A stretch of 61,669 nucleotides of DNA, counting the filler, from Isurus oxyrinchus (taxonomy: Eukaryota): the NCBI GenBank assembly GCA_026770705.1. It is 7 parts of 7 records of this genome, joined end to end, with 100 filler letters (N's around TTAATTAATTAA, not from the genome) between each part and the next. Parts side by side here need not be neighbours in the genome. Positions count along the whole stretch, not along the records: positions 5,179 to 10,440 come from JANJGN010000140.1; 6 more parts are not named here. One strand, given 5' to 3'. The position numbers and the translations under genes are program-made. A model generated the notes under the pieces. That model did no database searches. It saw nothing but the letters and a program-made list of their open reading frames with translations, and was not told where the DNA came from. Position 1 is the first letter of the stretch. Each line of letters starts with the position of its first letter. Shown one piece after another: positions 7,368 to 8,322 of the stretch.

Positions 7368-7420
7368 CGGCTGTGACAGTCACCACTGTCCCGGATCCAT
7401 CCGCATAATCAGTAAACCAC
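7368..7420 (-). CDS. J gene segment of NAR-type (probable NAR-TCR) cluster, WFTDYADGSGTVVTVTA
   Basis: GxGT-VVTV J motif with D in place of F/W, as in NAR-type J segments. Phase-1 GTAAGT donor at 7367; abuts a 23-RSS. Confidence 0.93.
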
Positions 7421-7459
7421 CACAGTGACACCGCTCTCAGTCTCCCCGGTACAACAACC
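7421..7459 (-). other. 23-bp-spacer recombination signal sequence of J
   Basis: Plus strand CACAGTG (7421-7427) + 23 nt + ACAACAACC (7451-7459). Confidence 0.93.
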
Positions 7460-7777
7460 ACCGACACCTCAACCTGCCGGGAAATCATCATCACCAGACA
7501 GTAGAAACTGCACAAATATTCAGTGGATTTAAATAAATAAACAATATTCAATGTTTCAAAGTCTCTGTCGGTTCAAACTGTTCTTTGTGAGGCCCTGAGA
7601 TCTGAGTAAATGGTCCCGGAAACGAGATGTTCGCTTCATATAAGCAGACAAAATTATTAAAGTAAGAGAACTGAATGGTGGAAATTACAATGAAATGTAA
7701 CCATATCACAGCGATAATAACATCAACCCAACAATTCACTATCCGGACCCGGAGAATTTATATTGTGACCGGACAGA

Positions 7778-7805
7778 GGTATTTGCTCAGGTCTCCCCCA
7801 CTGTG
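7778..7805 (-). other. 12-bp-spacer recombination signal sequence 3' of V(D)
   Basis: Minus strand CACAGTG + GGGGAGACCTGA (12 nt) + GCAAATACC. Confidence 0.88.
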
Positions 7806-7956
7806 ACTTCCCCATATTCCCATCTTGTCGTAGTGGTACTGAGCTTTACAGTAATAGGTGGCGGTGTCTTCAACTCTCACAACCCGATATTCCAGCGAAA
7901 ATGTCTTTTCTGCTTTGTTCACCGACACAACAAATCTCTCTCCACCCCCACCCCCC

Positions 7957-7989
<33 letters not shown>

Positions 7990-8322
7990 GCTGGAGATCC
8001 GCTCCCACTCTGTCCCGGTCTGAGTTTGTCTGAAGAAAGCCCCGCCCGTCAAAGGACGAGCGTAAAAACCACCATAGAAAACGCAGGTGATGAATAGGGA
8101 CTGACACTCCTTCCTGGTCACCGCTGCCGGGGTCTGTACCACTGACTGACTGAAAGATACCTGGAAATTAAACAAAGAGAGTTTAATGGACCATCAGAAC
8201 CGAACTACAGAACGCGGTTAAAACTCGAGCAGCTTTATATTAAATCCACACAATGTCGGTTTGTTTGATCGGTACTCATGGGGTAAACAGACACACAGGG
8301 TGAAAACAAGGAGAATTCCCAT
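7806..8322 (-). pseudogene. NAR-type V gene (probable NAR-TCR V, germline-joined VD). Leader 8322-8280, V exon 8160-7806; disrupted as assembled
   Basis: Leader MGILLVFTLCVCLP. V: SQSVVQTPAAVTRKECQSLFITCVF...WERISS(G)nERFVVSVNKAEKTFSLEYRVVRVEDTATYYCKAQYHYDKMGIWGS. It has the NAR-like CDR2 deletion (cf. IgNAR ESISKGGRYVETVNSGSKSFSL) and an extra FR1 Cys. Lesions: donor reads ATGAGT, one extra base after the acceptor, and a poly-G frameshift. Confidence 0.8.

What the first reader, a model, noticed from the sequence alone, without database searches (positions are those of the whole stretch)
7368..8322. NAR-type V-J cluster with V-12RSS / 23RSS-J, no free D and a 14-codon germline CDR3
Seen: a NAR-like V (no CDR2, extra FR1 Cys in RKECQSL) extends 42 nt past the YYC Cys (KAQYHYDKMGIWGS) before a 12-RSS. 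A 23-RSS J (DGSGTVVTVTA) lies only 385 bp away, and no RSS-flanked D is visible between them. The TRGVs in this window extend only 4-5 codons past the Cys. Known: shark IgNAR and NAR-TCR V domains are built by V-D-J joining; a non-canonical FR1 Cys is described for NAR-TCR V; germline-joined VD genes occur in shark Ig clusters. Inference: most likely a NAR-TCR cluster whose V-D was joined by RAG in the germline, leaving one somatic junction and a semi-invariant long CDR3. A more novel alternative is a single-domain receptor lineage that rearranges V-J directly, like a light chain.
Basis: partly seen in the sequence, partly recalled or inferred. Interest (0 to 1): 0.8.

Follow-up and report, generated by a model that had tools for sequence, protein, structure and literature searches.

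The report
Dead D-less shark NAR-TCR V-J cassette
This is one copy of a shark T-cell-receptor "NAR" gene cassette in which the V piece faces its J piece directly with no D piece between, but in this copy the V gene itself is broken, so it is a relic of an interesting gene family rather than a working gene.

Summary
On the minus strand there is a leader, then a NAR-type V. The V runs 14 codons (42 nt) past the YYC Cys into a perfect 12-RSS (7805-7778). A 23-RSS (7459-7421) plus a NAR-type J (7420-7368, donor G|GTAAGT) follows, with 385 nt between the coding ends and no RSS-flanked D.

It is a NAR-TCR cassette, not IgNAR. It has the a-b loop Cys and FFRQ in place of WYRK. The V is 88-90% identical to white-shark and basking-shark gene models that continue from the same J into a leaderless V-delta.

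- The leader splice donor reads AT where all laid relatives read GT.
- The V exon has one extra base at its first codon.
- A 46-nt G-run replaces the usual Gly-Gly codons and shifts the frame.

A germline V-D fusion remains the best origin, but the support is indirect. Two bamboo/epaulette-shark relatives appear to have about 22-nt spacers after shorter tails (back-translation).

The scan already found this D-less layout on many other pieces of this genome. The primary nurse-shark papers could not be read.

The parts
8280..8322 (-). Leader exon: MGILLVFTLCVCLP plus 1 nt
   Evidence: translation. The peptide is identical to the leader of basking-shark model P0003 and of most lamniform models.
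8274..8279 (-). Leader splice donor, mutated: ATGAGT here, GTGAGT in relatives
   Evidence: table 3. At place 8279 the window has T (+ strand). Laid contigs read C: X1 5093.3 of 5298.3 depth (9 contigs), X2 397.8/397.8 (6 contigs), X3 1713.6/1713.6 (4 contigs). On the minus strand that is G in relatives and A here.
8161..8273 (-). Leader intron, ending in ...tttccag
   Evidence: sequence. The boundaries are inferred from relatives' LPR|SFSQS junction.
7806..8160 (-). NAR-TCR V exon, a pseudogene. FR1-FR2 is 8160-7987 and FR3 plus tail is 7940-7806, in different frames.
   Evidence: 90% identical to P0017 (Carcharodon) and P0013 (Cetorhinus) over 80 residues.
8158..8159 (-). One extra base at the first codon of the V exon (GTATCT here; the relatives' contigs lack one base at 8158 or 8159)
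   Evidence: table 4. One letter is left out at 8158 (X1 1938.5 of 3531.3; X2 464.3 of 485.6) or at 8159 (X1 1592.9 of 3531.3; X3 1222.7 of 1222.7). Relatives' proteins read Arg-Ser-Phe-Ser here.
7941..7986 (-). 46-nt G-rich run in place of the two Gly codons of ISSGGRF. It shifts the frame by +1.
   Evidence: Relatives read ERISSGGRFVV. Reads could not confirm its length: one search reports 'reads seem cut there: 7935-7997'.
7806..7847 (-). 14-codon germline tail after the Cys: KAQYHYDKMGIWGS. It is the candidate fused D plus junction.
   Evidence: Relatives share KAQY-x-Y and then diverge.
7778..7805 (-). 12-RSS of the V: CACAGTG, 12 nt, GCAAATACC
   Evidence: 0 mismatches, expected 0.01..
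7460..7777 (-). V-J spacer with no RSS-flanked D. It is multicopy in relatives.
   Evidence: no heptamer/nonamer pair. table 2: summed depth in X1 is 2454-3045 in bins 7467-7818, against 128-268 in flank bins 8875-9402.
7421..7459 (-). 23-RSS of the J: GGTTGTTGT, 23 nt, CACTGTG
   Evidence: 1 mismatch to consensus, expected 0.06..
7368..7420 (-). NAR-TCR J segment: WFTDYADGSGTVVTVTA plus 1 nt (phase 1)
   Evidence: Matches the J of lamniform models..DT(D/K)YADGSGTVVTVTA.
7362..7367 (-). J splice donor GTAAGT
   Evidence: In one search, table 8, record 17 (X20, a 199-letter contig) lies on 7366-7487. Its other 76 letters lie on nothing here, so it leaves the stretch at this donor.

Best explanation
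This is one cassette of the multicopy NAR-TCR part of a lamnid shark TCR-delta locus.

How intact copies would work (mechanism inferred, not shown here):
- RAG would join the 12-RSS of the extended V directly to the 23-RSS of the J. The 385-bp signal-end fragment is deleted. One junction is made and no D is used.
- The J donor (phase 1) then splices the assembled NAR domain onto the next exon downstream. That is ultimately a leaderless supporting V-delta, which rearranges separately.

Origin: the extended tail plus the 12-RSS most likely descend from an old germline V-D joining that predates the multiplication of the cassettes.

This copy: the V is a pseudogene.
- The leader donor is GT>AT.
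- There is one extra base at the first V codon.
- A 46-nt G-run in the CDR2-less FR2-FR3 turn shifts the frame.
- Both RSSs, the J and its donor remain intact. The copy could still be cut and joined, but non-productively. Its J could serve an upstream V.

My odds for each step:
- NAR-TCR cassette: 0.95.
- Germline D-less 12/23 layout: 0.9.
- V dead: 0.8.
- Origin by V-D fusion: 0.55.
For: Layout and chance.

NAR type:
- Piece A (58 aa) matched 10 distinct PDB sequences at E<=1. Eight are named VNAR or new antigen receptor and two are named 'nanobody'. Best hit 7spo_C, E=0.0022.
- The intact relative P0001 matches VNARs over its whole domain (8hgi_C, 6.3e-17). VH chains match only its FR3.

NAR-TCR rather than IgNAR:
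- The a-b loop Cys and the missing Trp of WYRK are the published hallmarks (PMC1845163, passages read). Both are present here: RKECQSL and FFRQ.
- Of 63 gene models, 45 carry the Cys motif. In the 51 where the FR2 motif was found, none has Trp.
- P0003 (XP_078393577.1, Cetorhinus) has the same leader and J, then a leaderless V-delta with a CDR1 Cys.
- Identity is 0.90, 0.90 and 0.88 to P0017, P0013 and P0010.
- In the tree, ours sits inside the NAR-domain clade (100/100 against 6 supporting V-delta rows), in a subfamily of 18 rows (97/93). Its end branch is 0.063, against a median of 0.081.

Lesions: places 8279 and 8158/8159, G-run.

Germline and multicopy:
- The V-spacer-J bins are many-fold deeper than the flank bins 8875-9402 in DNA-type runs of two coded organisms (table 2).
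- P0001 back-translates to a 12-nt spacer plus an 8/9 nonamer.
- Unchecked scan notes list many D-less cassettes in this genome.

V-D fusion:
- P0051 (Hemiscyllium) back-translates to a heptamer 8 codons after Cys. Its best nonamer is at spacer 22 (8/9; 6/9 or less at other spacers).
- P0058 (Chiloscyllium) back-translates to a heptamer 7 codons after Cys. Its best nonamer is at spacer 22 (7/9; 6/9 or less elsewhere).
- P0001 has 11.3 codons after Cys and ours has 14. Both have 12-nt spacers.
Against: - No free D from any species could be aligned to 7778-7847, so the fusion is inferred from signal type and tail length only.
- The spacer lengths in P0001, P0051 and P0058 come from codon-degenerate back-translation. 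They are upper bounds, not DNA.
- The tails of ours, P0001 and the shorter lamniform tails (for example P0050, KAQYKYK then a heptamer-compatible site) share no clear D core.
- No tandem duplication explains the extra 18 nt.
- No run held more than 0.36 of the sampled words. All contigs laid on FR3 differ from the window at 7882, 7888 and 7889. So the lesions were judged against paralogs or orthologs, not against reads of this locus.
- The G-run length is unverified. One base fewer would restore the V frame across it.
- A cryptic route (donor GA|GTACCG, acceptor ttcag|T) would read MGILLVFTLCVCLPH-D-QSVVQTP in frame. This is my own reading.
- The supporting V-delta is outside the piece. I know of it only from unchecked notes.
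Confidence: 0.6

Rival explanations
1. The D-less V(12)-(23)J layout is primary. The NAR V lineage in these cassettes never had a D and rearranges like a light chain. The tail is simply V-encoded CDR3.
For: - V-12/J-23 is also the kappa-type arrangement (recalled).
- No fossil of a D or of a V 23-RSS lies in the spacer.
- Tails differ between subfamilies without a shared D core.
- Scan notes report many D-less copies and none with a free D.
Against: - P0051 and P0058 back-translate to about 22-nt spacers right after shorter tails. This implies that a D-using form exists in the same gene family.
- Papers that cite the nurse-shark work speak of VDJ rearrangement for both domains (passages only).
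- The J carries the Ig-heavy-type 23-RSS.
Confidence: 0.12
2. The 12-RSS is old in this subfamily. The extra 6 codons of this copy's tail (MGIWGS, compared with tails such as KAQYRYDK or KAQYKYK) arose by local insertion or slippage in a decaying pseudogene, not from a D.
For: - Basking-shark models P0010 and P0050 have a heptamer-compatible site after 8 codons.
- The extra 18 nt are G-rich with TGGG(G)AA motifs like the RSS spacer next to them (read by eye).
- The same V has a G-run expansion elsewhere.
Against: - TRF and the repeat finder see no duplication there.
- No 18-nt 'left out' row at 7806-7823 is among the 12 rows shown, table 4, although rows with depth as low as 88.6 are shown (15 rows not shown).
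- P0001 also has a long tail of 11.3 codons with a 12-nt spacer.
Confidence: 0.15
3. The V is functional. The three lesions are assembly errors or are bypassed by a cryptic donor and acceptor, and the G-run encodes a Gly-rich loop.
For: - The G-run length could not be checked.
- A cryptic GA|GTACCG donor and ttcag|T acceptor would keep the frame (my reading).
- The end branch in the tree is short, 0.063.
- Both RSSs and the J are intact.
Against: - Three independent defects hit the same exon pair.
- The two defects that relatives could be checked against (8279 and 8158/8159) are each contradicted by nearly all laid depth.
- The donor change is a CpG-type transition, and the +1 base is not in a homopolymer.
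- Even with the cryptic route, the G-run must still be miscounted.
Confidence: 0.1
4. The V-D join is a somatic intermediate from lymphocyte DNA captured by the assembly.
For: None found.
Against: - The V-spacer-J unit is multicopy in runs of two coded organisms from several studies.
- P0001, from a separate ENA assembly, has the same type of signal.
- Notes report many copies in this genome.
- A pseudogene V with a dead leader donor is unlikely to dominate a tissue.
Confidence: 0.02

Closest known systems
NAR-TcR / NARTCR of cartilaginous fish (Criscitiello, Saltis & Flajnik 2006; elephant-shark survey PMC1845163)
   Same: - Leader-bearing NAR-type V with a Cys in the a-b loop and no Trp in the WYRK position.
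- Its own J with a splice donor.
- Relatives' models continue into a leaderless V-delta with a CDR1 Cys.
   Different: - The papers I could read describe both domains as made by V(D)J or VDJ rearrangement. Here no D lies between V and J, and the V carries a 12-RSS.
- This copy's V is a pseudogene.
- The 2006 paper and Deiss 2019 were not held, so what they say about the germline D is unknown to me.
Germline-joined (VD, VDJ, D-D) shark Ig clusters, including IgNAR type III with two D segments
   Same: - RAG-type joining fixed in inherited DNA.
- A partly fixed CDR3.
- The remaining signal is that of the last joined segment.
- PMC3149040 passages mention germline-joined clusters and type III clusters with 2 D segments.
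   Different: - Those are Ig loci. This one is in a TCR-delta cassette.
- The join here is inferred, not demonstrated against an unjoined D.
IgNAR V clusters (V, three D, J, C exons)
   Same: The single-domain NAR fold lacking C'-C'' (CDR2). The best PDB matches are VNARs. The J motif is DGSGTVVTV.
   Different: - Only distant similarity to VNARs: E=0.0022 for the FR1-FR2 half, against 88-90% identity to NAR-TCR models.
- No D segments and no Trp.
- The J splices to a V-type exon in relatives, not to a C exon.
Marsupial TCR-mu with a germline-joined V (PMC3457774 passages)
   Same: A three-domain TCR chain family in which one V domain has been partly or wholly pre-assembled in the germline.
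   Different: - In TCR-mu the supporting V is fully joined and invariant.
- Here the distal V keeps one junction to make.
- The two evolved independently.
Ig kappa-type V-J joining
   Same: V with 12-RSS, J with 23-RSS, and one joining step (recalled rule).
   Different: The V is NAR-type. Its tail is 11-14 codons past the Cys, far longer than a light-chain V end. The J is heavy-chain-like.

Membership tests
NAR-TCR V (NAR-TcRV) | Typical leader peptide exon | tested here: met
   MGILLVFTLCVCLP is identical to the leaders of lamniform models. However, its splice donor is mutated in this copy (place 8279).
NAR-TCR V (NAR-TcRV) | Cysteine in the a-b loop (PMC1845163) | tested here: met
   RKECQSL. 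The same motif is in 45 of 63 gene models.
NAR-TCR V (NAR-TcRV) | No canonical Trp of the WYRK motif (PMC1845163) | tested here: met
   FFRQ. 0 of the 51 models with a recognisable motif have Trp.
NAR-TCR V (NAR-TcRV) | NAR-type single-domain V lacking CDR2 (C'-C'') | tested here: met
   Piece A matches only VNAR-type chains in the PDB. The intact relative P0001 matches VNARs over the full domain. In this copy the FR2-FR3 turn holds a 46-nt G-run.
NAR-TCR V (NAR-TcRV) | Dedicated J that splices to a leaderless supporting TCR-delta V with a CDR1 Cys | tested here: inconclusive
   - The J and a phase-1 donor are present.
- Relatives' models show the J followed by DSSS..LSCEYSGFCQY.
- The supporting V lies outside this piece. 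It is known only from an unchecked note.
NAR-TCR V (NAR-TcRV) | Distal domain built from V, D and J (as cited in PMC1845163 and PMC5931798) | tested here: not met
   No RSS-flanked D lies in the 385 nt between the coding ends, and the V has a 12-RSS facing the J's 23-RSS.
Germline V-D joined cluster | The V coding end is extended by D-derived bases and followed by the D's 3' signal instead of the V's own | tested here: inconclusive
   A 14-codon tail and a 12-RSS are present. Relatives with about 22-nt spacers have 7-8-codon tails (back-translation).
Germline V-D joined cluster | An unjoined homologue exists whose free D and 3' flank align with the tail and RSS | not testable with these tools
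No shark DNA other than this piece was available. A findings look-up by sequence was blank.
IgNAR cluster | Three (or two) D segments between V and J, with the J spliced to C exons | tested here: not met
   No D. In relatives the J is followed by a V-type exon.
Functional V gene segment | Intact leader splice sites and one open frame from leader to RSS | tested here: not met
   The donor is AT. There is a +1 base at 8158/9. A 46-nt G-run puts FR1-FR2 and FR3 in different frames.

The most novel reading that the evidence does not exclude
In lamnid sharks the antigen-binding distal domain of NAR-TCR is assembled by a single V-to-J joining. This would follow an ancient germline V-D fusion that spread through the whole cassette array. 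If so, a TCR-delta-linked receptor family works with a largely germline-encoded long CDR3. Orectolobiform sharks would keep the three-segment form, giving a natural before-and-after pair for RAG action in the germline of a TCR locus. This copy would be a dead witness of that family.
Probability: 0.45. Interest if true: 0.6.

Novelty: new variant of a known kind. Interest (0 to 1): 0.35.

Why it matters
NAR-TCR is cited as a 'doubly rearranging' chain built by two V(D)J events. A cassette family that has dropped the D would mean three things:
- The distal, antigen-binding domain of these sharks has much less junctional diversity than assumed.
- Its long CDR3 is partly inherited.
- RAG-type joining has been fixed in the germline of a TCR locus, something well known for shark Ig clusters but rarely reported for TCR.

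This particular copy adds little function, because its V is broken. It does give a clean, readable example of the layout. It also shows that the RSSs and J can outlive the V.

Public gene models of these cassettes are also unreliable. They bridge V to J through a false intron and translate the J's RSS as protein (the ..AVSLWW.. stretch).

Tried and rejected
What led nowhere:
- **Supporting V-delta in the piece.** I translated 5179-7400 and 8300-10440 in six frames. I saw only repeat-like debris and no V-type exon.
- **Rfam and tRNA scans.** Rfam at gathering threshold and ARAGORN on the piece gave 0 matches each.
- **Duplication behind the tail.** TRF and the repeat finder found only the homopolymer and short chance pairs.
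- **Ig octamer upstream of the V.** GTGCAAAT at 8441-8448 is one of 8 one-mismatch matches, against 5.86 expected. That is not above chance.
- **Word-index protein searches with window pieces.** These gave only 2 of 2 candidates each. The search with P0003 gave 62 of 80.
- **Pfam.** Nothing for the FR1-FR2 piece. V-set matched the FR3 piece at 6.3e-05, below the cut-off.
- **Papers.**
  - Searches.
  - I read passages only, in PMC1845163, PMC12227049, PMC3457774, PMC6795676, PMC5931798 and PMC3149040.
  - None of those passages describes the germline RSS or D layout of NAR-TCR.
  - One search was badly chosen and returned unrelated human TRDV papers.
- **Big representative search, structure prediction, fold search and the protein atlas.** Not used. 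The family was already clear.
- **IgNAR in a tree.** No IgNAR sequence was available as a stored protein, so the tree has no IgNAR rows. It cannot place NAR-TCR V relative to IgNAR V.
- **Supplements of papers.** Closed. Table S1 of PMC12227049 (coordinates of NARTCR V in shark scaffolds) might bear on the layout.
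Full report
**Anatomy**

Everything lies on the minus strand of the piece.
- An ATG at 8322 opens a leader, MGILLVFTLCVCLP.
- After an intron ending in tttccag, the V exon runs from 8160 to 7806.
- Its first half reads VSFSQSVVQTPAAVTRKECQSLFITCVFYGGFYARPLTGGAFFRQTQTGTEWERISSE.
- Its second half reads ERFVVSVNKAEKTFSLEYRVVRVEDTATYYCKAQYHYDKMGIWGS.
- The Cys codon is 7850-7848, and 14 codons (42 nt) follow it.
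- Directly after come CACAGTG (7805-7799), a 12-nt spacer and GCAAATACC (7786-7778).
- Downstream lie GGTTGTTGT (7459-7451), a 23-nt spacer and CACTGTG (7427-7421).
- The J (7420-7368, WFTDYADGSGTVVTVTA plus one base) and a GTAAGT donor follow.

**Is it more than chance, and is there a D?**
- The 12-RSS pattern matched once with no mismatch. Expected 0.01; 3 of 200 shuffles gave any match.
- The 23-RSS consensus matched once with one mismatch. Expected 0.06; 11 of 200 shuffles.
- A scan of the whole piece, both strands, looked for CAC-heptamers (at least 5/7) with a nonamer (at least 6/9) at 11-13 or 22-24 nt. It gave 11 hits. Only these two have a 7/7 heptamer.
- Between the two coding ends, the three other near-heptamers (7707 +, 7767 -, 7589 -) have no nonamer at a legal distance.
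- So no RSS-flanked D is present.

**What kind of V?**
- Against the PDB, the FR1-FR2 half matched 10 distinct sequences at E<=1. Eight are named VNAR or new antigen receptor and two are named 'nanobody'. The best is 7spo_C at E=0.0022.
- The FR3 half matched VH and VNAR FR3 alike. It matched Pfam V-set below threshold.
- Passages of PMC1845163 give the marks that set NAR-TcR V apart from IgNAR V: a leader, a Cys in the a-b loop, and no Trp in WYRK. All three are here (RKECQSL, FFRQ).
- The word-index search with the window's FR1-FR2 found P0001 and P0002. A cluster mate of P0002 is XP_078393577.1 of the basking shark.
- That model has the same leader and a near-identical J (..DTKYADGSGTVVTVTA). 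It then has a leaderless V-delta with a Cys in CDR1.
- A second search with that model's first 130 residues returned 62 gene models out of 80 candidates. They come from Carcharodon, Cetorhinus, Heterodontus, Mustelus, Pristiophorus, Scyliorhinus, Stegostoma, Chiloscyllium, Hemiscyllium, Rhincodon, Pristis and Amblyraja.
- Our V is 0.90, 0.90 and 0.88 identical to P0017 (white shark), P0013 and P0010 (basking shark) over 80 residues.
- A tree used 36 NAR-type domains plus 6 supporting V-delta domains. Another 12 non-NAR rows were left out, and there are no IgNAR rows.
- In that tree ours lies inside the NAR clade (100/100), in a subfamily of 18 rows (97/93). Its end branch is short, 0.063 against a median of 0.081.
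- The intact relative P0001 matches VNAR structures across its whole domain (6.3e-17), whereas VH chains match only FR3.
- This is a NAR-TCR cassette of a lamniform shark.

1. *G-run.*
   - Relatives read ERISSGGRFVV.
   - Here the two Gly codons are replaced by GAG, a 46-nt G-rich run (7986-7941: 29 G, T, 6 G, T, 5 G, T, GGA) and GAG.
   - The run shifts the frame by one, so the two halves of the exon lie in different frames. TRF reports a homopolymer array at 7945-7987.
2. *Leader donor.*
   - At 8279 the window has A on the minus strand, where nearly all laid contig depth of relatives has G.
   - The depths are X1 5093.3 of 5298.3, X2 397.8 of 397.8 and X3 1713.6 of 1713.6.
   - This turns the leader donor C|GTGAGT into C|ATGAGT.
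3. *Extra base.*
   - Nearly all laid depth lacks one base at 8158 or 8159. In X1 the two places together account for all 3531.3 (1938.5 + 1592.9); X2 464.3 of 485.6; X3 1222.7 of 1222.7.
   - Relatives' proteins read LPR|SFSQS there. Here the extra base puts the exon out of phase with the leader.

Caveats on the lesions:
- No run held more than 0.36 of the sampled words.
- All contigs on FR3 differ from the window at 7882, 7888 and 7889. The comparison is therefore with orthologs and paralogs, not with reads of this locus.
- The run length could not be checked ('reads seem cut there: 7935-7997').
- A weak cryptic donor and acceptor pair could keep the leader in frame. This is my reading and is untested.
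- I put the pseudogene call at about 0.8.

**The layout is a family trait, not a one-off**
- The summed depth of relatives' contigs over V, spacer and J is 1094-3045 in X1 (bins 7291-8346). Flank bins 8875-9402 give 128-268 (table 2). The tool warns that this is no copy number, so I take it only as 'multicopy'.
- P0001 comes from a separate ENA assembly. It back-translates to a heptamer 11.3 codons after the Cys, with its best possible nonamer at a 12-nt spacer (8/9; at most 6/9 at other spacers).
- The scan's own earlier notes are unchecked AI leads. They list many D-less NAR-TCR cassettes on other pieces of this genome, one of them also dead. None mentions a free D (one search was blank).
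- The notes also place a dead germline-joined NAR exon and an intact supporting V-delta just beyond the low-coordinate end of this piece. That is downstream of this J. I could not see that DNA.

**Origin**
- By the shark Ig-heavy pattern (recalled, not tested), V carries a 23-RSS, the last D carries 12-RSSs and J carries a 23-RSS. A germline V-D join would then leave exactly V(D)-12 facing 23-J.
- Two orectolobiform models read through their V signal far enough to back-translate.
  - P0051 (Hemiscyllium) has a heptamer 8 codons after the Cys and its best nonamer at spacer 22 (8/9).
  - P0058 (Chiloscyllium) has a heptamer 7 codons after the Cys and its best nonamer at spacer 22 (7/9).
- So the same gene family seems to contain V segments with a 23-type signal and short tails. 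It also contains V segments with a 12-type signal and tails longer by 10-18 nt, about the size of a D.
- That favours fusion over a primary V-J lineage. It rests, however, on degenerate back-translation of two models.
- The tails share no clear D core. I could not fetch DNA of any relative.
It only makes the fusion older than the amplification.

**How it would work**
- In intact copies, RAG would pair the 12- and 23-RSS, delete the 385-bp interval and make one junction. This is inferred.
- The J donor is phase 1, as in models that read TVTA|D-SSS.
- A 199-letter contig of run X20 (guessed to be RNA) lies on 7366-7487. That stretch covers the unrearranged J with its RSS. The contig's other 76 letters lie on nothing here, so it leaves the stretch at the donor (table 8).
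- This looks like a sterile J transcript spliced onward, in that organism's copy. It is a hint only.
- No V-to-J joint is among the 15 joints shown (165 not shown).
- In this copy any V-J join would be non-productive. The intact J could still serve an upstream V with a 12-RSS (speculation).

**Literature**
- I saw only passages of six papers. They speak of 'separate VDJ' or 'independent V(D)J' rearrangements. None gives RSS spacers or a germline map.
- Five searches found no paper in the held library that describes a D-less or V-D-joined NAR-TCR.
- The primary papers were not held: Criscitiello 2006, Deiss 2019, Ott 2021 and Criscitiello 2010. Supplements were closed.
- The novelty of the layout therefore remains provisional.

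**Verdict**
- The NAR-TCR assignment is sound.
- The V-D fusion reading is the best but is unproven.
- This copy is a pseudogene.
- The scan has already reported the same layout on other DNA of this genome.
- Interest for this item is modest.

Noticed in passing
window 7941-7987 (minus strand, inside the V exon): A run of about 30 G followed by TGGGGGGTGGGGGTGG sits where relatives have two Gly codons. It may be a microsatellite-like expansion of GGN GGN. Contigs of all runs break there.
   Followed up: partly
window 9403-9754 and 6411-6586: These are extremely high-copy repeats. Summed contig depth is 1.4-8.8 million in X1 for the 9403-9754 bins and 167,523 for 6411-6586, with many 'goes back' joints. 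They look like abundant SINE-like elements. There was no Rfam or tRNA match.
   Followed up: partly
window 7480-7497 (minus strand, upstream of the J nonamer): A (GAT)3 stretch varies by 3-nt units in relatives (places 7484 and 7492). Several gene models in two shark orders read ..HSDDD.. between the V tail and the J, which back-translates to a heptamer plus (GAT)n. I could not tell whether this is related or coincidence.
   Followed up: no
window 7707-7728 (minus strand, in the V-J spacer): CGCTGTG (7713-7707) lies 6 nt after a nonamer-like GGTTGATGT (7728-7720). The spacing is not legal for an RSS. It could be a decayed signal or chance.
   Followed up: no
Proteins P0003, P0006, P0007, P0009, P0011, P0013, P0050: Public gene models of lamniform NAR-TCR cassettes bridge V to J through a false intron. 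They translate the J's RSS spacer and heptamer as ..AVSLWW.. (AVLLWW in P0011). Our own J region reads RAVSLWW in that frame. Their source names (DSCAM-like, Ig gamma-1 heavy chain-like, TCR alpha MC.7.G5-like) are misleading.
   Followed up: partly
Proteins P0051 (Hemiscyllium) and P0058 (Chiloscyllium): Read-through of the V signal back-translates to a spacer of about 22 nt. So orectolobiform NAR-TCR V may keep a 23-type RSS and presumably a free D, unlike the lamnid copies.
   Followed up: partly
Protein P0004 (Carcharodon, 329 aa): This model reads J (..TVTAG) straight into a second NAR V exon (SFSQSVTQTP..) before the supporting V-delta. That echoes the scan's notes about pre-joined extra NAR exons inside cassettes.
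   Followed up: no
window 7366-7487, run X20 record 17: A 199-letter contig from a run guessed to be RNA covers the unrearranged J with its RSS. Its other 76 letters lie on nothing here, so it leaves the stretch at the J donor. This may be a sterile J transcript spliced to a downstream exon. The 76 other letters were not shown.
   Followed up: no
window 8441-8448 (minus strand, about 120 nt upstream of the ATG) and 8346-8353: An octamer-like GTGCAAAT and a CATATAAA TATA-like box lie upstream of the leader. The octamer match is not above chance (8 matches against 5.86 expected).
   Followed up: yes
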